Positions 40,126-53,725 of a stretch of DNA of 64,000 bases are shown here, one piece after another. Within the stretch, counting starts at the first letter, position 1; the number at the start of each line of letters is the position of its first letter. Under the pieces are notes generated by a model, which ran no database searches, was not told where the DNA came from, and saw nothing but the letters and a program-made list of their open reading frames with translations. The DNA lies in the NCBI GenBank assembly GCA_000708835.1, contig DF237454.1, positions 1 to 64,000 of the forward strand, written 5' to 3'. This DNA comes from Klebsormidium nitens. Lineage: Eukaryota > Plantae > Klebsormidiophyceae. The translations under genes were made by a program, and so were the position numbers.

Positions 40126-43100
40126 ATGGGTGTTCAGGGGCTGTGGGAGCTGTTGGCCCCCGTCGGCCGGCGTGTGTCCGTGGAAGCTCTTGGAGGCAAG
40201 CGACTGGCAGTTGGTGAGTATTGCAGCCACTTTTGCCTTCGTGGGGTATGTATTTTAGGTCATCTTGGAGAGTTGTTGTGAAGTAGTGCTCAGGAAGCTC
40301 CTTTACTCGACATTGAATCTAGTTGAAGCACAATCAGCGAGGTTTAGCAGTTGGTATCCAGCAAGATGATGGTGGTGATTTGAGCAACTGTTCTCAGGCG
40401 CGGCTTTGAGAGATTCCTGAGACTGTTGAGGACGAAAGTCAGAAGAACGGGCCCTTGGAACATCGTTACATCGGCGTTCTTTACAGTTGATTGTAATATG
40501 ATCACCTGCAGACACGGATCTTATCTTGTCTCGTATTCGCGCTCTCCACAAGAAGCCAACTTGCGCAGGGATGCAAGGAGGGAATGCTGACCTGATCGAC
40601 AGAGCTTAGCATTTGGTCTGCTGTTGCACTTCAAAATGATGGTTCTTAAGTGGTTGGCGGACTGAAGTTGGACCTTAAGAATTGGAATAAGAAGGACGAG
40701 TCAGTAACTTTGAAGAGCACCTAAGAAGTGGTTCTGCTGCACCACCATTAGCGATACATAGCCGACACCATATCCACCTGCGAGTTGACTGCAAACGGTT
40801 TCCCAGACCTGAATCCCTCTGCTTCTTGGTTTCTTTGCAGATGCAAGCATCTGGATTGTCCAGTTCATGAAGGCGATGCGCAATGACCAAGGCGAGATGC
40901 TCCGTAACGCACACTTGCTGGGGTTCTTCCGGCGCATCTGCAAGCTGCTGTACCTGCGCGTGAAGCCCGTCTTTGTGTTTGACGGGGGCACCCCCGCTCT
41001 GAAGCGGCAGACGGTCATGGCTCGCAGGCGGCAGAGGGACAAGTCTCAGGCAAAGATCAGGTCAGATTTCGACGCTTATATTAGTTATTATCCAAGAAAG
41101 TAGGGCTTGTACTCTGACCTTTGATGCAGTATGCAAAGCTCAGCTTTATAAGTGTTGACTGCAGTTCCTTTCCTGGTAAACTATCTGGTGGTTGGAAGTA
41201 ACAAGCTGAAGCCCCGTGTGTGGAACAGGTCGTCAGATGATTTGATTTAGGGCGGCCCTGTAAAATACGTTACAGACTTACAAAATGACGGTCTGATCTT
41301 GAGAGTGAAAGCATTTTGACTCCATGGTCACTCAGGCAGTAGCCCGTGGGCTTACTGGCAGGTGCAAGTATAACCCGTACCACCAACTGCAAGGAAAGAT
41401 TGGCACTTTAGATTGATCTGAAAAGCCACTGCCCCACTGTCTGCAGGAAAACCGCTGAGAAGCTGCTCCTGAACCATCTCCGAACCCAATGCTTGGAAGA
41501 GCTCGTCGAGAAGAAGACCAAGGCCTCCCGCCTGAAAATGCAATCACCAGTCCCTGGGGCGACTTTCACCCCAGACTCTGCCCCCCCGGAAGAACCAGCC
41601 CCGCAGCGAAAGCAGCGGAGGGGGGTCCGTGCAGATGGGAGGGGTCAGTTTAGTGTCGTGCGAGGTGCCGAGAACAAGAAGGGGAAAGCGCTGAAGAGGC
41701 GGCTGAGGAGAAGGATCAAGGAGAAAGGAGTGCGGAGGCGCCAGGCAGCGGCACAAGGGGGTCAGGGGGAAGACGGGGAAGTTGAGAGCGAGGGAGATGG
41801 GGAAGAAGACGTTGAGCTTGAAGAGGAGGAGGAGGAGGAAGAGTGGGAGGAAGGGCAAGGGGGTCTTGGGGATGGAGATGCTGGGGCGTCGACAAATACC
41901 CATGCGGCGCAAGGAGCTGAAACAGGGAAGGTTATTGGCCAAATGTCTCAGGGGCCTGGTCAAAGTCCGCCGGGGGCCAGTGCAGGTGGATTGGCGTCGA
42001 TGGCGGGTTCTGCGGGAACAGCGGCTCGAAATTTCAGAGGGGAACAGGGGTTGGGGCTTCCTGGTTCGGGAATGTCGGCCTCGATAGAGCGACGGCCTGC
42101 TGCAGAACCGCAGGGTGCAAAGGCTCCCTCATCCGGACCTTTGCCGACGTCAAGTCTCGCACAGCCCGTCTCGAATGGAACCCGATCCTTGCAATTGAGC
42201 AGCAGTGCCGGTCAACCATTGCAGATCATGGCCGGCCCTTCTGGATTGAGTTCGCACCAAAACGGGGGTCCCTCAGCCAATGGGCTTCAAAACGAGGGGG
42301 CTGGAACGCAGGCGGGTAAAGGGGAGGAGGACGATGAAGAGGAGGAGGAGGGGGAGTTGATCATGATGCCAGATACGGACAACGCGCTGGATCCGACGGT
42401 GCTGGCGTCGCTGCCGGCGTCGGTGCAGATCGAGCTGATGCAGCAGATGAGGGAGCGGCGAGTCGCGCAGAACCGCGAGAAGTTCAGGTTGGTAGCCTTG
42501 CCTGATAGACTCTCCACGGCTTCTGGGTCTGGAGGGTTCCGATTACCCCAATGTCAAAGGTTTTGGCTTGCTAGAGTCCGATGCTTCAAGGTCTCAGGGT
42601 GTTCTCCACTTCCTTGCTTCTTGTATCTCGGACATCCCTAGGCAGTCACACAAGCTTTTTGGAATCTCTTGGCCAGTTCGGATGTTGGCTGCATTGTGGT
42701 GAGGACAAATTTTCCCGGTCTGGACCCCGTAGGTAGCTGCTCGAATGAAGGATTTCGTTTCAAACTTACAGAAAAGCCGCCCGCAGAGGCGCAAATGCGA
42801 CGGGTTGGGACAAATGTGCACCGAGTTAGTTTTACGCTTGATTTTATTCCCCAGAAACCAAGGAAGTGCACCCTCAAATGCATCTCAGGTTTCTCACAGG
42901 CTTCCACTGTGCCAATCTACATTTTAAAACGGTATCCATGGTTCCGAAAGCTTTTGCGGAGGTCAACGACGCACCTTTTGCGATTGCAGGCAAGTGGCCA
43001 AGGTCCCCGAGTCCTTTTCCAGCATCCAAATGGAGGCGTACCTAAAGAACGTGGCGATGCGGCGCGACGTTGCCAAAGTACACGAGGCGATGGCCAAAGG

Positions 43101-46100
43101 CACCAAGGTCATCCCTGGCATGGAAGACGTTCCGGCCATGCGGATTGCGAGCGAGCAGGGGCGAGAGTTTATTTTCAAGAGCAATCCTGAGAGGGCTGAC
43201 TCGGAATCTCAGGACGGTTTTAAGGCAGCTTTGGGAGTAAAAGGCTTAGGCCGGGGGTTGGGGGCGAGGAAAGTCCAGAAGCCAGGGGCGTTGAAATGGA
43301 GACAGAGCGAGAAGGACAAAGTGGAAAGCTACAAGGAGAAGCCGTCGTGGTTCAAGGCGAGCCCGTATGGGTTGGGTGAGGTTAAGTTGGAATCGGTTAG
43401 CGACGGGGTGATTGGCGTGGTCAATGCGGAGACGGTCAGTGATGCCGGTTATGGCGAACTGCAAGTGGTTAAGGAGGAGCTGGAAAGTGCTGGAGGGAGC
43501 GGGAAAGTTTTGGTTGCAATTGACCCGGAGCTTGCGGTGCTTGATACGAATTCGCAATGGTCGATGGGGGGGCGTTCGTGGTGGGGGGGGGAGGTCGGGA
43601 GGGGGGCGAGAGGGGGGGGGAGAGAGGGACGAGGAAGGGGGGGCAGAGGCGACAATGGCGCCGACAAGTTCCTGGGGGGGTGGATGAAAGTGCTGAAGCT
43701 GACCAAGGACGAGGTATTTGGAAGCGACGAGGNNNNNNNNNNNNNNNNNNNNNNNNNNNNNNNNNNNNNNNNNNNNNNNNNNNNNNNNNNNNNNNNNNNN
43801 NNNNNNNNNNNNNNNNNNNNNNNNNNNNNNNNNNNNNNNNNNNNNNNNNNNNNNNNNNNNNNNNNNNNNNNNNNNNNNNNNNNNNNNNNNNNNNNNNNNN
43901 NNNNNNNNNNNNNNNNNNNNNNNNNNNNNNNNNNNNNNNNNNNNNNNNNNNNNNNNNNNNNNNNNNNNNNNNNNNNNNNNNNNNNNNNNNNNNNNNNNNN
44001 NNNNNNNNNNNNNNNNNNNNNNNNNNNNNNNNNNNNNNNNNNNNNNNNNNNNNNNNNNNNNNNNNNNNNNNNNNNNNNNNNNNNNNNNNNNNNNNNNNNN
44101 NNNNNNNNNNNNNNNNNNNNNNNNNNNNNNNNNNNNNNNNNNNNNNNNNNNNNNNNNNNNNNNNNNNNNNNNNNNNNNNNNNNNNNNNNNNNNNNNNNNN
44201 NNNNNNNNNNNNNNNNNNNNNNNNNNNNNNNNNNNNGAGTGGGAGGACGGCGCCGGGGGGGGCGATGTCGCTGTGAGCGTCGAGGGGGGTGCAGAGGTGC
44301 AGGGTGATGATTTGTTCACAGCCGACATGTTCAAGAAAGGAGGGGCGAGGGAAAAGCTGGATCCAGGGGTAGTTGCGGAAGTGGCCCGGGCGGCGGCGGA
44401 GCGGTTGGCGAAAGCGAACGGATTGGGCGGAATGGCGAACGGAATGGGCGGAACGGAGCAGGAAAGAGCCGATGCAGAGATCAGCATCGGCATCCAAGTT
44501 GCGCAGAAGGATGGTGGCGAGGGAGGGGCTCACGTAAACGAGAGAGTGGCTGACGAAAGCGGAAGAGGGGCTGACGTAAGCGAGATGGGTAACGGCCATG
44601 GCTTGGTTGTGAGTGAGGACGAGATGGACTGGGAAGATGGGGGCGTGCTCGAAACCGGGGGGGTGGCAAGGAACTCAGTCGCTGCTACAATTGCTGACCA
44701 AGCGCAGACAGAAATGGGAGCCGGAAAGTTTGAGAGCGTGGAGAACGTGGGGTTAAAGAAGCCGGGGATAGCGAGTCGAGGACTGATTTCCAAAGCGGGT
44801 GCTAGACGTCTCGAAGAAACGCTTGTTCTAACAGCGGATGGAGAAAGCGTGCGCCCGTTTGTGATGGACGACGGGAGCGATGTCGAGTGGGAGGACGGCA
44901 GCGGGCAGTTTGGGAAAGCGGACCCGGTGTCGAAACCTTTAGACTTCTCCAGCGAGCAAAGTGAGACTGCAGGAAGCCTAGACGATCTGGCGACACTGGC
45001 GGCGGTTCTGGACGATCCGACGGGGGCGCTGCCGAGCATTGGCGCGCTGGCGGAGGACGCGGACTTGGAAGAAGCGATACGGAGAAGCCTAAAGGATTTC
45101 CAGGGGGCTGGCGGCGCGGCAGGGGGCGGGAAAGCCTCTAAGGGAATTGTCATCCGAGAAGGAAAAGGAGCGGGAGAACCACTAGCTGCAGCAAACAATG
45201 GAAAGCAGCCAGCGACCGACTCGGTAGTGGAGATTGCGGATGGAGAAGAGGCGTTTTTCGCGCGGGAGAGGGCGAGAAAGGGCAAGGGAAGAGTTGGGGA
45301 GGAACAGGCTGCGAGGCATGAGGAACCAGATTGTAAAGTAAATAAGCCCTTAACGGGCGCTGCAAATGTCCCCTCCAGTGTACAGACAGGTGACGGAAAA
45401 GCACGCCCCCAGCAAACGGACATTTCTCAAGTCCAACCAGACGAACGCGCTTCTGGACAGGTTTCGGACCAAACAAGATCCTTAAACCCACCACTTGTTG
45501 ACGCAGCAACGCTCCCTCCATCCGTGCTACCGAGCATTTTGCCGGACCCCATTCCGAGCGCTCCGGCAGTAACAGCGGATCCGACAGTCTCTGCAAACCC
45601 CTCCGCGGATCTTAACCCTCAGTCAAAGTTCTCGCCTGAGGGGCTTTTGACTCCGCCACTGAACACCCCCTCCAAAATAACGCCTCCAGCTGGGTCAAAC
45701 CCTCTTCCAAACCCTGTTGAAAACCCCTCTCTAACCGGCACCGCGAGCAAATCGAGCGCTCGGCCCACAAACGGTCTCCCAAAAGTGAGTGACTCGTTAC
45801 CCCCCCGGCCCAGCAATATGCGGAACCCGTTTGCGGACGACGCCCCTCCGTCTTTTCCGGACATTGACGAGCTTCTCGAGGACGAGGAAGAGCTGTCGGA
45901 AGACCGGCACGAACTAGAGCGGCGGGAGAAGGAGGCGCAGGACTGGGAACGCGCCGAGCAGGAGACTCTGGAGATGGAGGCCGCCATCGCCGAGAGCCTT
46001 GTGGATTCCGTTCCCGGAACCGGGGGGCCGGAATTCCGTGCGGGGGCGTCCGGAAGCGCGGCGAGCGGTGTGCACGAAAAGCAACTAGGTGCGGGCGAAT

Positions 46101-49100
46101 CGTCACGGAGAGAACTGGCAGGATCACGGTCGGAAGTGGAAGTCGGACGAAGTGCGGGGCTCGATTTCGGGGGATCATCCGATGCGGACGCTCCCAACGG
46201 GGGGGCGGCTCACGAGCCGGACGCCGCTCTGGGGGCGTCGGGAGGGGTGAGGATAGCGACCCCCCGGGGCGGGGAAGTGATGTTTGAGGGGAGCACGCAG
46301 CAGGGGCGCTTGTTAAGGGAGCAGGAGACAAGGCGGGCGGAAAGGGAAAAGCTAGCGGAGGAAAAGGCGAAGCGGGAAGCGTTGGAGAAGGAGGCGGAGA
46401 TGCAGGACGAGCGGGAAAGGTTGGCAGCAGAAGAAGCGGCGCTGCAGGTACGGCTTCGTGTATTAGGAGGTCGTTTTTTGTAGGGCGCGTTGTCTTATGT
46501 GAGGGACGTTGTCTTATGAAAGGCTAATTTTTGTTTTCAACAGAGCACGTCCTCTTATGTAGGGTACGTCGTCTATTTGGGGCACGTTGTCCGAGGTACG
46601 GTTGCTCGTCTACCTAGGAAAATCAGTCTGAGGTACGGTTGCTCCGACCTCATGAGCGGTCGCCTGATTCGTGCCCCAGTAAATGCAGGCACCCTGTGAG
46701 TCCAATTCGGAACGGTCTGTTACAGAGGTTGAAAGCTTCTCCTGATTCTTGGGTTGCGAAATTGAGTGTGTAGCCGTTGCTGATCGCTTGGACTGACAGC
46801 AAACTTGCGCCTAACCATTTTTAGCTCACAATTAGCTGCACGTGTTCTGACTTGTGTCTGAGATGGTATATCTAGTGCCGAAGCTTGTTCTTGCCGCCTT
46901 TCTTGCTGAGATTATTGTTGCACTGTTTGCGGAACGGAGACGGCAAATGGAGCGGTCCGCATTACAACCTCTATGGCAGCATGGCGTGAGCTGGGGAGCA
47001 CCACGCAACAGTTGCCGAGGACGAGCGGGTCAGTGATTGTAGGCTTCAGCAGAATGCAAATTCAAGATCGTCCAACGCTCTGAATCCTAGCGGACCGAAC
47101 AAGGGTGTGGAAGAGTCAGATTCTTGTCCGAATCCCTGACCACAGTCCACAGACGGACAATGAGCGCACAAATGCTCTGCCGACGGATGACAATACAGCT
47201 GGACTACGACTTTCGAAGTTTCCAACTACTGCTTAATACAAGTCTGCCGAGTTTCAATCAATTCTCTCCCATCCTCGCAGGCTGAGATTGAGCGCGAGCG
47301 CGCGCTCTTGGAGGACGAAGAAGCCGAGCTGCAGTACGCGCAGCGCGCCAACACGATCAACGCCGAGTCGGCTACCGGGGAGATGTTCTCCGAGTGCCAG
47401 GAGCTGCTGCAAATGTTCGGCATCCCGTTCATTATTGCGCCGATGGAGGCAGAGGCGCAGTGCGCGGCAATGGATAAGATGGGGCTGGTGGACGGGGTCG
47501 TGACGGACGATAGCGACGTGTTCCTGTTCGGCGCCAAGGTGGGGCAAGGGGTTTTTAATTTCCGTTGTACTTTTCTATTTCGTATTTGTTTGTCGTATGT
47601 TGTCCACAAAACGTATCAATCGTTTTCTTTTGGTCAAATGATGGACGAAAGAAGCAGTGCGCGGCAATGGATAAGATGGGGCTCGTGGACGGGGTCGTGA
47701 CGGACGATAGCGACGTCTTTCTATTTGGAGCCAAGGTGGGACGACGGGCTTTCAAGTCTTTTCTTTAGAATGTTTGGGGATGTTTTCGTACCTCAGGGTT
47801 TCATGGATGGAGAGGAGTGCAGTGCGCGGCAAAGGACAAGATGGGGCTGGTCGATGAGGTTGTGACGGACGACAGGGACGTGTTCCTATTTGGCGCAAAG
47901 GTGGGGGCATTGGGTTTTCCGTACCTCTTGAGGTATCTCTTTTCTTGTTGTTCTCTACATGTCTCCACATAGTCTGGGACTTATGTTGAGTTTTGTACGT
48001 TGGAGGATGCGCCGTGCGCAGCGATGGACAAATTGGGCAAATAGCTGAAGATTGTTTTCAGACTTCCCTGGATCTGTTCTTACTTCCGGGACGTTGGTTC
48101 GCGGATTACGGAGATGAACAAGATGGGGCCCGTCAACGGAGTCGTGACAGCAACGTGTTTTTCTTTGAAGCCAAAGTGGGCCTTTGACAAGCTCTCCGGA
48201 CCGATGCGGGTGGCGTATTGAGACGTGCTCGATGTCAGCGGCACTCGCTTGTAACAAAATGTAGTTCCGCAGAGCCTCTACTTATGTTGAGTCACAGGAA
48301 ACATTCGCAGCCAATCAAGAGAATTTTGAATGTTCAAAGGAGAGTCTCCACAGCAGAGAAACGTGTTTTCTTCTTTTCCAGGCGGTGTACAAGAACATCT
48401 TCGACAACAAGAAGTACGTGGAGACGTACTATTTGCGCGACATCGAAAGTGAGATGGGCCTGGATCAACAGAAGCTCATCAACATGGCCACGCTCCTTGG
48501 TAGTGACTACACCGAGGGCATCAGGTGCGGCGGGGAAACCCAGACACAAGATTGCTTTCTGGTGCAGTTTGGTCTGTACGTATCAGTCTTCCTGGTTTCT
48601 ACTTTTTCATCGCTGTTATGTTGCTGTGCGCCACAGCGCCCAACCAACGTATCTGCCCCTGGTTGTAACGGGTAAACTTCTTTTCTTTGGAGGTCTGTGT
48701 TCGCAGTAAAAGTGCTTCGGGGCTGAATGCTTCTGGAAGTTCTTGCAGCTCGTAGGAACCTTACGCATCTTCTTGGGAACGCTCGTCTTTGGCAGCAGGG
48801 GTGCGGGCTGCTATGCACTCTCGGGACGTTTCACGCTTCCCGTCTTTACAAAAGCTATCCCTGTCTGTTCCAAAGCCGCAAGACGTTAGCATTACGATTC
48901 CTCGTCACGTATCCCCAAGTCTGAAAGCCCTCCCGTGTGTGCAGATCATACGCTAACGCATGCCCTCCCTTTTGCAGCGGCATCGGCATCGTGAACGCCA
49001 TCGAAGTCGTGAACGCGTTTTCCGGCCCCGACGGCCTCTCCAAGTTTCGGGACTGGCTGGATGCTCCCGACGAGGCCCTGTTCGCTGCCGCGCAAAAGAA

Positions 49101-52100
49101 CGCCAAAGCCCGGGAAAAGCGCAACCAGGCCGAAAACAAGGCCTCCGCCAAAATCGAGTCAGACGACGAAGACCGACCGCTCGCGTCGCTCGCCACGAAT
49201 CGGAACAGCGGAACCGGAACCGGCGAGGCCCTGTTGGAGGTCAAGGCGGAGGTGAAAGAGGACGCAGAGCTGGCGATCGCAGCGAACCTGGCCGAAAACA
49301 GGGCCCCCAAGGAGGAAAACGAGGAGACCGTCCGTTTAAAAGCGTTTGCCGCGAAGCACCGGAACGTGAGCAAGAACTGGACGGTGCCGCCGCGGTTTCC
49401 GGACCGCGCGGTCGTGGCGGCGTACACGCGTCCGAGGGTGGATACGTCAGAGGAGAAGTTCGAGTGGGGGCGGCCGGACCTGGAGGCGCTGCACCAGTTC
49501 TGCTTCGAACGGGTGAGCGGAACGGACTTGCCGCAAATGGTGCAAATGTCGTTTGCGTCTCTTTTGTTGTTCATGCAGTTTGCTCCTTGGGAGAGAATCA
49601 AAGACGTTGCTTGCTCGATTGTCCAATTCTCTCAATGTTCTGAGTGTTTCTTCGTCCACGGTCGTGACTTCAACTGCCTGACATGCCTCGTGCCTTGATA
49701 AGGCTGACTTGACGGAGAAGATGCTCAAACAGGAACTTCAGTTCACGAAAATGTGGAGACTTGAATTCTTGTCGTGACTTGCGTACCTGGTCAGAGCGGT
49801 TCGGGCGATAGGCGTACTCTTTTGATCCGGCTCCCTTTCACCCGCGTACTAGTCTTGGCGCGGAAAAGCATGTCGGAAGGGCATGCCAATTTTAAATCTC
49901 AGATTGTTTTCGTCACTAGCTTTCAGTCAAACTTGCTCAGTTCACTGTGACTGCTACGTGTGCTTCAAGTGCTCCAATGTCTGCACGCAGTTTTCGTGGC
50001 GCAAGGACAAGTCGGACGAGATCCTGCAGCCGGTGGTGAAGGCGTTCGACGCGCACGAGTCCCAGACGCGCCTCGAGTCCTTCTTCGGGTTCAGCCAGCG
50101 ATTTGCCAAGATCCGCTCCAAGCGGATTGCGAAGGCCGTGACCGGAATCACCGGAAAGAAGAACGCGGAACTCATGGCGGACGAAATGGAGGCGGCGCCA
50201 GTGAAGAAGGGCCGGAAGAAGAAGAGGGACGGGAAGGCTATAGAATCCGGAAGTGCACGGGAGAACGCGGCTGAAGCGGGAACTACGAGAGAGGCGGCAC
50301 CGGCCAGGATTGGCGGCAACAAAGAGACGAATGGGAAGCTTATCGAGTCAGGAGCGGAAGGGGAAGAAATAGCTGAAGCGGGAACTTCTAGAGGTGTCGA
50401 GCTGGATCCGGAAATCGGAAGGAGTATCGAGAAGGCGGCTCGGTCGGTGGGCAGGGGTGCCGGGAGGGGAACACGTGGGAGGGGTAAGGCCGCCCCACGT
50501 GGAAGAGGCGAAACGGGGACGCGTGGCAGAGGCCGTGGTCGGGGAAGGGGAGCCGAGGTTGAGAGGGCCAAAGAACTAGGAACGGGACAAGCGGATGTGT
50601 TGAACGGGGGCCCTGCCGAAGCGGCCGCGCCGCCATCGAGAAGGGTGAGCTTTTGTATATAGTTTTCAGCGTTTGGGTTGCTTTTGTGGTCTCGTGGGAG
50701 CATTGCGGAAGGGGATTCAGATCGCTTTGGATGCATTGCGGATGGTCTATTGGACAGCGTTCTGTTGATTGGCAATAGGTCGGCCGTTGGTTTCCACCTG
50801 CCGCTCTTTTAGAGCTTCCCTGACAACTCAACACTCAAATATATGAGTCGTGAACATGAATCCACTTGTCTGTTATTGAGCCGACCGGGTGGTACTACGG
50901 CGGACGTCTTACTCTCTTGTCACAGCCTCCGCGAATCCGGGAATTACTCACAAGCAACACAGCTCGGTCAAGCAGCTGCTTAGTGGAAGTCGATCGTACT
51001 TGACAAATTGTCACTTCGTAGAGCAACTCTTCCAAAGATCTCACTGAGCGACTCGCGGTCTCTCATCCTCCGAAGGCTCACCCCTGTCTTTCTGCACAGT
51101 CGAAGCGACAGAGAGCGCAAGTCGCCTACGCAGAGCCGTCGATCGAGCATTCGGACGCCAGCGTGAGCGACTACCAGCTGTCCGATGACGATCCGGACGC
51201 GTCGCCCAGCAAGCGGCCGCGGGGTTCAGGGTCCAAGGACCGGGAGACGCGCCTTCTGCAGGCCGCTGAGGCGGTGGCGGCCGCGAAGCCGCGACTTGCC
51301 GGGGTTGGAGGGGTTTCGGATGAAGCTCCGCTGAGAGAAGTGCGGTCCGGTGACGCGACGGCGGCTGCGGACGAATTGCTCGGGGGAGCGAAGGGTTTTG
51401 CGGTCTCAGAGGGTTTGGAGGTTTCGGAGGCGGCCGCCGTCGAGGCCCGGGAGAGCGGGGGAGGGTTCGTGTTGGAGGAAGATGACGTTACTGCTGACGA
51501 GGAGGCGCTGCATGGGGGGGGCGGGTTCGTGCCGGACGAAGAAGAGGAGGGGATAGAACCGGGTACTGCGGACGGAGGGTTAGGGAAGGTTGACGGAACC
51601 GGGGAGGGTTTGCGGACGGAAACCGGGGAGGTTTCTACGAGAGACGGGGATGGGAGCGGGGGCGTAGACGATGCGGTGTTGCGGCTCACGAGCGATCCCG
51701 CAGACTTCGCTTCTCGGTTGGAAGAAACAATGGCGCAGCCTGACGGGGGGGTGGACAAGCCCAGCGGGCGCCAGTTCCTGACCCCCCTGAAACGTAAGAA
51801 GCAGGTCCGTTTTCAGGAGGACAGGGAGAAGCCCGAGCCAAAAGCGCCCAGACCGTCGCTGTACCTTGGCGCTGCGAAGGGCCCTGTGTCTGGCAGTGTT
51901 GACGGGGTTACGCCTGGGATTGGTGCGGGACCGGTGATGACAGGGCCTGGGATGCTTCCTGTGCAACCGGGGGGGGCGCCGGTTGGCGGCATGGTTTGGA
52001 TTAACCGGGGGCCGGTACTGAATCTGTGGGTGGCGGTAGTTGCAGTGCGGCAGGGGTTCTCGTTCGAAGAGGGGCTATCGTTTGGGAAAGCGGTGACTAC

Positions 52101-52515
52101 GATGTACGCGCAAACGAAGGGACGCAGGCTGGGGATCATCAAAGGGGGGGGTGCGGAAGAGCAGGAAATGGAGGGGGTGGAAATGTATCGAGTGTTCAAC
52201 ACGGAGCTCCCCGCCAAACGGCTGAAAGACGGGCTCCAAGCGGTGAGCGAGAACCGGCTCCTCGCGCCGGGCCCGATCAAGGCGTTCCTCAGCAAGGCCT
52301 TTGCGCATAACTGGGCATCGGCCCGGGCGGCTATGGAGTTGCTGGCGGGCACTTATGATCCGGAGGAACTAGGGGCGGAGTGCTACAATCTGTATGTAAG
52401 ATTCAGGCCCAGCATTCAGGACGGAGTAAAGGGGTGGGGTCAGAAGGGGCTGCTAGATTTGGGCTTCATCTCGGGCACGCTGGTCAGGGAGAAGCAGGAA
52501 AGAGGGCCGCTCTAA
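40126..52515 (+). CDS. UVH3: XPG/ERCC5/RAD2-family structure-specific endonuclease (UVH3-like), about 2,600 codons, with an extra C-terminal domain
   Basis: Exons 40126-40213 ([29 protein letters not shown]), 40841-41060 (DASIW...[14 protein letters not shown]), 41447-42487, 42990-46447 (spans an N gap), 47281-47538 ([14 protein letters not shown]...[12 protein letters not shown]), 48382-48524 ([10 protein letters not shown]), 48978-49512 ([10 protein letters not shown]; [11 protein letters not shown]), 49991-50644 ([22 protein letters not shown]) and 51100-52515. All visible junctions are phase-compatible. XPG-N, XPG-I and H3TH motifs are intact. Confidence 0.92.
43733..44237. other. Assembly gap (505 N) inside the G-rich XPG spacer exon
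   Basis: Run of N flanked by G-rich low-complexity coding sequence. Confidence 0.99.
46486..46630. repeat. Degenerate short tandem motifs (cgttgtcttatg x4; gaggtacggttgctc x2) just inside an XPG intron
   Basis: cgttgtcttatg at about 46487 and 46507, with variants at about 46547 and 46567. gaggtacggttgctc at about 46593 and 46631. Confidence 0.7.
47654..48180 (+). repeat. Tandem array of 3-4 progressively decayed copies of the 3' end and donor of the XPG-I catalytic exon
   Basis: gcagtgcgcggcaatggataagatggggct..gacggacgatagcgacgt..tt.gg.gccaag|gtggg at 47457 (true exon), 47654 and 47819, with fragments at 48014 and 48116. Confidence 0.92.
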
Positions 52516-53725
52516 CAGGCTTCCGTATGTTCAAGTTCATACTGTGTACTGCGTGTTGGATGAAAAGTTCGGTTGTGGTCCTCGCTTGCAGGCGGACAGC
52601 TCAGGATGATCATTCCAGTCATCATTGGTTGTTTCCTGTTCATTCGTGACTACCAACTTGGCAAGCTGGACGTGTGTCGGAACCTCGATGATCATGGGCT
52701 CGATCATTTGTGGCGCTCCTTTGGGAGACTGTAAATAGCCACCGTATGTTCCTTACTGCGATCCTTGTGCAGTGGTTGATGACGGGTGGGCATCATGGGT
52801 CATAAGCGTCTTGATTGAAACGTTCCACCTCAACTCTAGCTAGAAGGTTAAGTTACTCTTCATTCGACAAAAAAACACGTACTCATGGTACGTATACTTA
52901 GGGACTCACACAAATAATTATGGTAGGCGCAATCTTCCCATGTTTCAAATCGAAACACACCTTATATATAGATGCCAGCACGTCATGATCCATGCAACGG
53001 TTCCACATATTCTCCCGTGGAAGTATTGCATGAAAGTCCCATGAAAGTCCCTAGTCCTAATCGTGAATGGACTACTTCTCAAACATATCGCCGTATTGAA
53101 GGGAACATGCTCAAGGCTCGCGTCGGAATGGACGGCGTTGTCGGAAGCTCAAGCGGCCAGCCTCGCCTCCGACAGTTAGTGCGCCAGCTAGACATTCGCC
53201 GGCCGCGCCCGATCATAGGTGCGGCCGCGCGGTCGCACCCGCGGCTAGATCCAGAGGCCAGCCATATGTACAATCTCGAGCTCAGCTGCAGTCTCACAGC
53301 ATTTGTGCGCTGGGTGAGGCGCCACAATCCTCTCTTATCCCACGGAGCTAGTCGCAAGGGGCAACATTGGCTTGGCTAGAAAGGTGCCCCTACAGGATCA
53401 GCCGCATAGCGGCAGCTGCTGGGCGGTTCAGCTCGGCAGCTCGTTCCCATGCTGCTCCTAAGAACAGTGAGTTGTTGGGAGATCTCATTCTCAGGCAACA
53501 GAGTAAGCTATCAGCTTAGAGGTTGTCGGAAAATACCAGAATCAGCATCCTCTAAGCAATGCTGTGCGTGGGGCTGTAAGCTGGATTCAAGTCACGATCT
53601 GCAGGCGTAGGATCAGCTGATACTGCGAAATTGTCTTGCAAAATTGCTGCCAAGACATCCTGGCAGGCAGCCCTGAGCTGCAGGAGCTGCTGCTGCTGAA
53701 CACTTTGATTGCACGTCTGCATGCA

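What the first reader, a model, noticed from the sequence alone, without database searches (positions are those of the whole stretch)
51991..52515. XPG/UVH3 appears fused to an uncharacterised domain of about 170 aa of bacterial/fungal type
Seen: after the normal XPG C-terminal basic region, a phase-0 GTGAGC donor (50645) and a good acceptor (tctttctgcacag, 51099) lead into one open 472-codon exon. It ends in a compact globular segment: [47 protein letters not shown]...FLSKAF...[46 protein letters not shown]. Known: animal, yeast and angiosperm XPG end in a disordered basic tail with no such domain. From memory, not a search, the pattern INRAPVLxLW...GRRLG...YxxFRP....GWGxKGxLDL occurs in stand-alone bacterial hypothetical proteins and some fungal proteins of unknown function. 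Inference: a Rosetta-stone fusion implying that this orphan family acts in DNA damage recognition or repair, and possibly a horizontally acquired add-on to UV repair in a terrestrial alga.
Basis: partly seen in the sequence, partly recalled or inferred. Interest (0 to 1): 0.8.

Follow-up and report, generated by a model that had tools for sequence, protein, structure and literature searches.

The report
XPG repair nuclease with extra domain
In this Klebsormidium-type green alga the DNA-repair nuclease XPG really is made as one protein with an extra, conserved 170-residue domain of an unnamed family whose predicted fold matches no solved structure, and unrelated lineages have joined this family to three other DNA-repair modules, which makes it a candidate new repair factor.

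Summary
The last exon (51100-52515) is spliced in frame, phase 0, to the normal XPG C-terminus. Transcript contigs from four studies carry the 50644/51100 joint, and two 5.2-kb contigs run from XPG exons to the end of the domain. Intron-retaining contigs reach only about 4-9% of that depth. Donor, acceptor and phase are kept in three related genomes.

The domain (51988-52503) belongs to a large unnamed family: 1290 clusters, at least 574 bacterial species, green algae and non-flowering land plants. It has no Pfam, NCBIfam or PDB sequence match. Its AlphaFold model is confident (pLDDT 93) and has no solved structural neighbour (best Z 3.5). It is under strong purifying selection (dN/dS 0.03-0.08).

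The repair inference is partly supported. Elsewhere the family is fused to an Lhr helicase, to an alkyltransferase-like lesion sensor and to a Pol-beta-type HHH_8 domain. Bacterial gene neighbourhoods show no repair linkage.

Horizontal acquisition is not supported. The best tree puts the domain among stand-alone streptophyte orthologues, although an AU test does not reject a bacterial grouping (p 0.17).

The biochemical function is unknown. My best guess is a DNA- or lesion-binding accessory module tethered to XPG. The scan had already noted this same stretch from another window (s1-346675).

The parts
40126..52515 (+). Whole XPG/UVH3-type gene, from the start codon (protein begins [10 protein letters not shown]) to the stop. 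It contains an assembly gap of Ns at 43734-44237.
   Evidence: XPG_N Pfam hits at 40126-40215 and 40867-41100; XPG_I hits; spliced transcript contigs; N run seen.
47308..47640 (+). Exon region encoding the first part of the XPG I (catalytic) region.
   Evidence: PF00867 XPG_I, E 1.8e-17.
48380..48524 (+). Exon with the end of the XPG I region.
   Evidence: PF00867, E 4.6e-5; exon limits from the transcript joint 48521/48975, cut +3.
48978..49512 (+). XPG exon (helix-hairpin-helix and C-terminal region).
   Evidence: Transcript joints in four runs; open frame.
49991..50644 (+). Exon with the normal XPG C-terminus: a PIP-like box QTRLESFF (about 50063-50086), lysine-rich stretches and an RG-rich tail. 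It ends ...PPSRR at a phase-0 donor.
50645..51099 (+). 455-nt GT..AG intron joining XPG to the added exon. If retained, a stop at 50660-50662 would end XPG after six more codons.
   Evidence: The joint that skips 455 nt is present in all four runs. Retained-intron contigs reach 12 vs about 270, 8.6 vs 97.8 and 1-3 vs 35 in depth. Donor and acceptor are conserved in L002, L003 and L088.
51100..51987 (+). Linker of about 296 residues, acidic and glycine-rich, without predicted domains. It has conserved patches, for example SKRxRAQV, two GGGFV...EE motifs, LTSDPxDFAxRLEE and [16 protein letters not shown].
   Evidence: No Pfam hit; alignment with P0002; dN/dS 0.21-0.43.
51988..52503 (+). Globular alpha/beta domain of an unnamed family, with order b1-a1-a2-b2b3b4-a3-a4-a5-b5-a6. 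Near-invariant residues: N14, R15, P17, W22, K52, Y144, R148, P149, G157-W158-G159 (numbering from 51964).
   Evidence: AlphaFold2 pLDDT 93.2, pTM 0.89; family search; conservation over 261 members; dN/dS 0.03-0.08.
52513..52604 (+). Stop codon (52513-52515) and a short 3' UTR. Transcript contigs end at 52572-52604.

Best explanation
Shown: the XPG/UVH3 gene of this streptophyte alga (Klebsormidium-type) ends in an extra exon. That exon is spliced in frame onto the complete XPG C-terminus (PIP-like box plus basic tail). It adds a disordered linker of about 296 residues and a 170-residue globular domain. The fused mRNA is the main isoform, the architecture is kept in at least three related genomes, and the domain is under strong purifying selection. 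The domain belongs to a large unnamed family found in many bacterial phyla, green algae and non-flowering land plants, and its confidently predicted fold has no solved relative.

Inferred: the domain is a DNA-repair accessory module. Most likely it binds DNA, a lesion or a nucleotide through its invariant basic and aromatic residues (R15, K52, R148, Y144, W22, W158), and the alga delivers it to repair sites by tethering it to the 3' incision nuclease of nucleotide excision repair. The fusion probably arose when XPG captured the ancestral stand-alone streptophyte gene, which in land plants carries its own long basic disordered N-terminal tail. The route would be read-through and a new intron, not recent transfer from bacteria.
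For: Fusion:
- The splice joint is present in four runs from four studies, with two 5.2-kb contigs spanning XPG exons and the domain exon.
- The joined exons give one continuous 915-codon frame.
- Phase-0 donor and acceptor are conserved in L002, L003 and L088, while the intron differs in length (455, 787, 858 and 584 nt) and sequence.
- The in-frame ATG at 51730 is not conserved in P0002.
- Public protein sets hold no separate, near-identical protein of 259-824 aa.

Constraint: dN/dS is 0.03-0.08 in the domain and 0.21-0.43 in the linker.

Family:
- 1290 clusters with E <= 1e-3.
- At least 574 bacterial species.
- All members are named 'hypothetical'.

Fold:
- pLDDT 93.
- Foldseek against PDB gives a best E of 0.14 at TM 0.2.
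- The exhaustive VIA search gives a best Z of 3.5.
- The Atlas returns only hypothetical clusters, at TM 0.84.

Repair link from independent fusions:
- Lhr helicase C-terminus (P0156). Lhr is a repair helicase (PMC10953399, PMC9841417).
- ATL domain with PWHRV (P0054). ATLs recruit nucleotide excision repair (PMC10779285).
- HHH_8 domain of Pol-beta 8-kDa type, in nine proteins of one clade.
- Eukaryotic members carry K/R-rich disordered tails.

Origin: the domain sits in an SH-aLRT 96 clade with Mesotaenium, Nothoceros, Welwitschia, Diphasiastrum and Adiantum proteins that start with their own Met.
Against: - No biochemical datum exists, so the repair role rests on four fusion events, and I screened only 67 long members for domains.
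- Two other fusions are not repair-related: a GH5 cellulase, which may be an artefact of my ORF calling, and PMSR.
- Bacterial neighbourhoods are heterogeneous, with no uvr, photolyase or alkylation-repair linkage. The commonest neighbours are an aldo/keto reductase (9 of 80 loci) and glyoxalase-family proteins (4 of 61 operon-like neighbours).
- The fused copy has replaced two otherwise well-conserved residues, E145 to V and Y108 to F, so it may not do what stand-alone members do.
- The reads were assembled contigs, not raw reads. They cannot exclude an additional internal transcription start or show protein.
- The AU test does not reject grouping the domain with bacteria (p 0.166).
Confidence: 0.6

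Rival explanations
1. The domain has a cellular role unrelated to DNA, for example detoxification of reactive electrophiles, a small-molecule enzyme or a chaperone-like protein. On this reading, its attachment to XPG in this algal lineage is a tolerated capture of a neighbouring gene.
For: Bacterial neighbours are mostly metabolic or detoxification genes: aldo/keto reductase, glyoxalase family, asparaginase, POR and DinB_2. There is no conserved repair operon. GH5 and PMSR fusions also occur.
Against: There are four independent fusions to DNA-repair modules. Eukaryotic members carry K/R-rich nuclear-type tails. The fused domain is under strong purifying selection across relatives whose synonymous sites are near saturation (dS above 1.5). 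A neutral capture would be expected to decay or be lost.
Confidence: 0.22
2. The domain is itself a repair enzyme rather than a binding module. It could be a glycosylase or lyase, or a lesion-reversal enzyme, using K52 or Y144 as nucleophile. XPG, Lhr, ATL and HHH_8 would then supply DNA targeting.
For: Invariant K52, Y144, N14, R15 and R148 cluster in conserved loops. The partner domains (HHH_8, ATL) are DNA-targeting modules that in other proteins accompany a catalytic domain.
Against: No conserved acidic, His, Cys or Ser residue is invariant. The one frequent acidic residue (E145, 83%) is lost in the XPG, Lhr and ATL fusions. No fold similarity to any known repair enzyme was found.
Confidence: 0.15
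3. XPG and the domain are two separate adjacent genes, and the joined transcript is a read-through or assembly artefact.
For: Plant orthologues are stand-alone genes. The reads were de Bruijn contigs, which cannot prove a single molecule. A minor intron-retaining form exists.
Against: The exact GT..AG joint appears in four studies at the same depth as the flanking exons. Depth of the last exon does not exceed that of the XPG exons. Phase-0 donor and acceptor are conserved in four genomes. No conserved start codon lies upstream of the domain. The linker is under purifying selection from its first codon.
Confidence: 0.04
4. The domain was acquired by the alga from bacteria by horizontal transfer and then joined to XPG.
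For: The family is most diverse in bacteria. The AU test does not reject a clade of window plus bacteria (p 0.166).
Against: The best hits after close relatives are streptophyte proteins at 48-50% identity, against 46% or less for bacteria. The domain nests in a clade with Zygnematophyceae, hornwort, lycophyte, fern and gymnosperm proteins (SH-aLRT 96; names).
Confidence: 0.08

Closest known systems
XPG / ERCC5 / Rad2 / plant UVH3 (3' incision nuclease of nucleotide excision repair)
   Same: It has XPG_N and XPG_I catalytic regions separated by a long spacer, followed by a PIP-like box and a basic C-terminal tail.
   Different: It carries a further linker of about 296 residues and a 170-residue globular domain after the basic tail. 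From general knowledge (not tested here), animal, yeast and angiosperm XPG end in the disordered tail.
Stand-alone streptophyte members of the same unnamed family (Mesotaenium ME000320S05423, Nothoceros, Diphasiastrum, Adiantum and Welwitschia proteins; Klebsormidium nitens KFL_003920130)
   Same: The same 170-residue domain at 42-50% identity, placed at the C-terminus after a long disordered region.
   Different: They start with their own Met and have a lysine-rich basic tail instead of XPG. They keep E145 and Y108, which the fused copy has changed.
Bacterial Lhr helicase with this domain at its C-terminus (P0156, Latescibacterota)
   Same: The same domain is appended to the far C-terminus of a large DNA-repair enzyme, and E145 is also replaced by V.
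   Different: The partner is a helicase with Lhr winged-helix modules, not a nuclease. This is a bacterial protein and an independent fusion event.
Alkyltransferase-like proteins (ATL; S. pombe Atl1, Vibrio vpAtl)
   Same: P0054 joins this domain to an ATL domain with PWHRV. ATLs hand O6-alkylguanine lesions to nucleotide excision repair (PMC10779285), the pathway in which XPG acts.
   Different: The window has no ATL domain. The resemblance is in pathway logic only.

Membership tests
XPG/Rad2 (ERCC5) nuclease family | XPG N-terminal domain (PF00752) | tested here: met
   E 5e-6 at 40126-40215 and E 8.6e-15 at 40867-41100, both above the gathering score.
XPG/Rad2 (ERCC5) nuclease family | XPG I region (PF00867) | tested here: met
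   E 1.8e-17 (63.9 bits) at 47308-47640. The second half at 48385-48540 scores 24.2 bits, just under the 24.9 cut-off because the region is split by introns.
XPG/Rad2 (ERCC5) nuclease family | Long spacer between the N and I regions (distinguishes XPG from FEN1 and EXO1) | tested here: met
   About 6 kb of mostly open, low-complexity coding sequence lies between 41100 and 47308, including a 921-codon ORF. Its exact length is unknown because of the N gap.
XPG/Rad2 (ERCC5) nuclease family | C-terminal PCNA-interaction (PIP) box and basic tail | tested here: inconclusive
   QTRLESFF fits the Q-x-x-L-x-x-F-F consensus and is followed by K- and RG-rich sequence. Binding was not tested.
Unnamed 170-residue family (INRxPVLxLW ... 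FRP ... GWGxKG) | Full-length, significant alignment to family members | tested here: met
   E 4e-40 to 1e-28 against many members over residues 10-170; it keeps all near-invariant core residues.
Unnamed 170-residue family (INRxPVLxLW ... FRP ... GWGxKG) | Conserved E145 and Y108 (83% and 92% of 261 members) | tested here: not met
   The window and its close relative have V145 and F108. These residues are frequent, not defining, so membership stands, but function may differ.
Any Pfam, NCBIfam, PADLOC or PHROGs family, for the added domain | Profile match above threshold | tested here: not met
   No hit except a sub-threshold RFX match at E 0.16. A profile search against PDB sequences gave only E 0.37.
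Any solved protein fold, for the added domain | Structural alignment covering most of the domain | tested here: not met
   Foldseek best E 0.14 at TM 0.21. VIA-align against 48,161 chains gave a best Z of 3.5, below the usual background of 7-8.

The most novel reading that the evidence does not exclude
The added domain is a structurally new DNA-repair module, conserved from bacteria to non-flowering land plants, that works with excision repair. It might recognise or process alkylation, electrophile or bulky lesions and hand them to XPG, UvrABC or Lhr. Four lineages would then have made this partnership permanent by gene fusion. That would name a so-far unnoticed repair factor in plants and in many environmental bacteria.
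Probability: 0.4. Interest if true: 0.8.

Novelty: new variant of a known kind. Interest (0 to 1): 0.62.

Why it matters
XPG is among the best-studied repair nucleases, and a conserved, expressed form with an extra globular domain is unusual. The larger point is the added family. It is big (over a thousand sequence clusters across many bacterial phyla, green algae, hornworts, lycophytes, ferns and gymnosperms). It has no name, no Pfam model and no solved structural relative. Fusions to XPG, Lhr, an ATL lesion sensor and a Pol-beta-type HHH_8 domain give it a concrete hypothesis that ordinary biochemistry and genetics can test. If the hypothesis holds, it adds a new component to excision repair and explains an orphan family. 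If it fails, the result is still a clean example of gene capture by a repair gene.

Tried and rejected
- Sequence annotation of the domain: Pfam, NCBIfam, PADLOC, PHROGs and PDB sequence searches found nothing usable.
- Fold searches: Foldseek against PDB, VIA wide and the ESM Atlas found no known fold. The language-model Atlas search returned only hypothetical clusters; a first attempt failed because the machine was busy.
- First word-index protein search: only one hit, so I used the exhaustive search.
- Bacterial neighbourhoods: 80 loci, with a naive ORF caller of my own, BLAST clustering and Pfam. There is no conserved partner and no repair operon.
- Separate-gene model: rejected on RNA joints, conserved splice phase and the lack of a conserved start codon.
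- Recent horizontal transfer: not favoured by the tree, but not rejected by the AU test.
- Literature: searches for the gene identifiers and for XPG in Klebsormidium found nothing on this domain.
- Organism identity: I did not verify it myself. 'Klebsormidium nitens' comes from other agents' notes. It agrees with the run pattern and with a 44%-identical K. nitens paralogue.
- Public annotation of the fusion: I could not check it, because the length window of the word search excludes proteins above 824 aa.
Full report
**1. What is in the sequence.**

The + strand from 40126 to 52515 holds a multi-exon XPG/UVH3-type gene.
- XPG_N matches lie at 40126-40215 and 40867-41100.
- XPG_I matches lie at 47308-47640 and 48385-48540.
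- A long low-complexity spacer lies between them and contains an assembly gap of Ns at 43734-44237.

- The exon ending at 50644 is followed by GTGAGC.
- An in-frame stop would follow at 50660-50662 if the intron were retained.
- A pyrimidine-rich acceptor ends at 51099.
- A 472-codon open exon runs 51100-52515.

**2. Is the fusion real?**

I laid contigs of four runs from four studies on 48300-52900. The runs are labelled only 'RNA?'. Their contigs skip three GT..AG introns exactly (48525-48977, 49513-49990, 50645-51099), so they are transcripts.
- The joint that removes 50645-51099 is present in all four runs.
- In two runs a single contig (5264 and 5233 nt) covers the XPG exons, the joint and the whole last exon to about 52600.
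- Contigs that keep the intron have 4-9% of the depth of the spliced form.
- Depth over the last exon is not higher than over the XPG exons, so there is no sign of an abundant separate transcript.

Joining the exons as the contigs do gives one 915-codon frame with a single terminal stop. It runs through a PIP-like box (QTRLESFF), K- and RG-rich sequence, then ...PPSRR|SKRQRAQV... into the new exon.

Caveat: these are assembled contigs, not raw reads. They cannot show transcript ends or exclude a minor internal start.

**3. Comparative support.**

Three related genomic contigs show the same order, XPG followed by this exon: L002, L003 and L088, from two sequencing runs and one metagenome.
- The donor (AGG|GTGAG) and the acceptor (CAG|TCGAAGCG) are conserved and both are phase 0.
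- The intron differs in length (787, 858 and 584 nt, against 455 here) and in sequence.
- Protein similarity starts at the first codon after the acceptor.
- The in-frame ATG at 51730, which a separate gene would need, is not conserved in the relative.
- dN/dS is 0.03-0.08 for the domain and 0.21-0.43 for the linker, across relatives whose synonymous divergence reaches saturation.
- Public protein sets hold no near-identical separate protein of 259-824 residues.

**4. What is the added domain?**

No annotation resource recognises it.
- Pfam, NCBIfam, PADLOC, PHROGs and PDB sequence searches find nothing.
- The exhaustive HMMER search finds 1290 representative clusters with E <= 1e-3, and 308 with E <= 1e-10.
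- A pattern scan finds relatives in at least 574 bacterial species. These span Planctomycetota, Chloroflexota, Acidobacteriota, Verrucomicrobiota, WOR-3, Aminicenantes and others, and most are stand-alone proteins of about 176 residues.
- Every source name is 'hypothetical'.

The eukaryotic members I could name are all green plants or algae:
- Mesotaenium, the hornwort Nothoceros, the lycophyte Diphasiastrum, the fern Adiantum and the gymnosperm Welwitschia.
- Klebsormidium nitens KFL_003920130, a 44%-identical stand-alone paralogue.
- The chlorophytes Apatococcus, Chlorella sp. A99 and Ostreobium.
- I did not identify any fungal member.

With a 62-sequence alignment, AlphaFold2 gives a confident alpha/beta model (pLDDT 93.2, pTM 0.89).
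- Foldseek against the PDB gives nothing (best E 0.14, TM 0.21).
- The Foldseek-independent search of 48,161 chains gives a best Z of 3.5, under the usual background.
- The ESM Atlas returns only unnamed clusters of the same family.
- So the predicted fold has no solved relative that I could find.

Across 261 members, the near-invariant residues are N14, R15, P17, W22, K52, Y144, R148, P149 and G157-W158-G159. No acidic, His, Cys or Ser residue is invariant. The fused copy keeps the core but has V for the common E145 and F for the common Y108. The Lhr and ATL fusions have also lost E145.

**5. What does it do?**

There is no direct evidence. The strongest indirect evidence is domain fusion. 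Among 67 longer members scanned with Pfam, and in the member clusters, the following appear:

| Partner | Evidence |
|---|---|
| Lhr-type repair helicase, domain at its far C-terminus | P0156; Pfam DEAD_assoc and the Lhr winged-helix domains WH_Lhr, WH3_Lhr, WH4_Lhr |
| Alkyltransferase-like domain with PWHRV instead of PCHRV | P0054; best PDB matches vpAtl (E 1e-15) and S. pombe Atl1 (E 2e-12) |
| HHH_8 domain, in a clade of nine proteins | matches the 8-kDa domain of DNA polymerase beta |
| GH5 cellulase (one case) | may be an artefact of my ORF calling |
| PMSR (one case) | single Pfam match (E 2.4e-5) in one member |

Background from papers: ATLs recruit nucleotide excision repair to O6-alkylguanine (PMC10779285). 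Lhr is a repair helicase, and in E. coli also a uracil-DNA glycosylase (PMC10953399, PMC9841417).

With XPG, that makes four independent joins to DNA-repair modules. Eukaryotic members usually carry K/R-rich disordered tails.

Against this, bacterial gene neighbourhoods are heterogeneous.
- An aldo/keto reductase lies within three genes in 9 of 80 loci.
- Glyoxalase-family proteins are 4 of 61 operon-like neighbours; DinB_2 accounts for 2 and SRAP for 1.
- There is no uvr, photolyase or alkylation-repair linkage.

I therefore commit to a DNA-, lesion- or nucleotide-binding accessory module tethered to XPG as the most likely reading (about 0.55-0.6). A catalytic role on lesions and a non-DNA role are the rivals.

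**6. Origin.**

In a maximum-likelihood tree of 93 domains, the window and its close relative sit inside a clade of 14 with the named streptophyte proteins (SH-aLRT 96). The bacterial sequences form a separate large group (names). The streptophyte proteins are stand-alone and have long disordered N-terminal regions.

The simplest history is that XPG captured the ancestral streptophyte gene in the Klebsormidium lineage. The AU test does not reject forcing the window to join the bacteria (p 0.166), so vertical origin is favoured but not proven.

**7. Comparison with known systems, and novelty.**

The gene is a bona fide XPG. The extra C-terminal domain is, as far as I could find, not described: literature searches were blank and there is no family model. 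I rate it a new variant of a known kind.

The larger value is that an orphan family whose fold has no solved relative now has a testable DNA-repair hypothesis. Another first-stage note (s1-346675) flagged the same stretch from an overlapping window. It is not independent evidence.

**8. Limits.**
- The organism's name comes from other agents' notes.
- The full protein length is unknown because of the N gap.
- Only 150 of the 1290 family representatives were listed, and only the longer ones among them were screened for domains.
- The reads were contigs.

Noticed in passing
window 47308-47768 (and on to about 48187): The end of the XPG catalytic exon (protein ...[29 protein letters not shown]) appears at least twice in tandem in open frames. 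The transcript contigs join only one copy to the exon at 48380. The scan also flagged this as s1-346691.
   Followed up: no
L088:1083-1120, against the real acceptor at L088:1241: In a close relative, the intron before the domain exon holds a decayed copy of the acceptor plus the first ~25 bases of the exon. That copy runs into a stop. This fits the 'exon-edge echo' arrays reported for this genome in s1-267523.
   Followed up: partly
proteins P0011, P0012, P0034, P0050, P0059, P0062, P0067, P0084, P0085, P0093, P0105, P0111: Many eukaryotic family members start with a short shared motif, M-x(0-3)-T-R-x-[QS] followed by K/R-rich sequence (for example MARTRSSTKAST). It loosely resembles a histone H3 tail. 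Its meaning is unknown.
   Followed up: no
proteins P0130, P0120, P0110, P0096, P0129 (C-termini): P0130 ends in LSPEQIARIAANREAALARRRAAQ. From memory, this resembles the RPA32C-binding motif of XPA, UNG2 and SMARCAL1. P0120, P0110, P0096 and P0129 end in a pattern (LQxxGxVY...F/L) reminiscent of an RPA32C-type winged helix. Pfam gave no hit, so this is only a lead.
   Followed up: no
window domain residues 108 and 145 (codons at 52285-52287 and 52396-52398): E145, which is E in 83% of 261 members, is replaced in all three enzyme-fused forms: XPG has V, Lhr has V and ATL has L. Y108 is F only in the XPG-fused lineage.
   Followed up: partly
L087:2080-7239: In the Latescibacterota contig, the Lhr helicase core (DEAD, Helicase_C) is called as a separate 386-residue ORF. 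It ends 15 bases before the 1327-residue ORF that carries the Lhr winged-helix modules and the domain. This is either a split gene or a sequencing frameshift.
   Followed up: no
window 43734-44237: A run of 504 Ns (assembly gap) lies inside the XPG spacer exon, so the full protein length cannot be given.
   Followed up: no
window 51460-51550: The linker holds two acidic-aromatic repeats ([10 protein letters not shown] and [12 protein letters not shown]) that are conserved in the relative P0002. Short acidic motifs with an aromatic residue are typical docking sites for TFIIH p62 or RPA70N (from memory, not tested).
   Followed up: no
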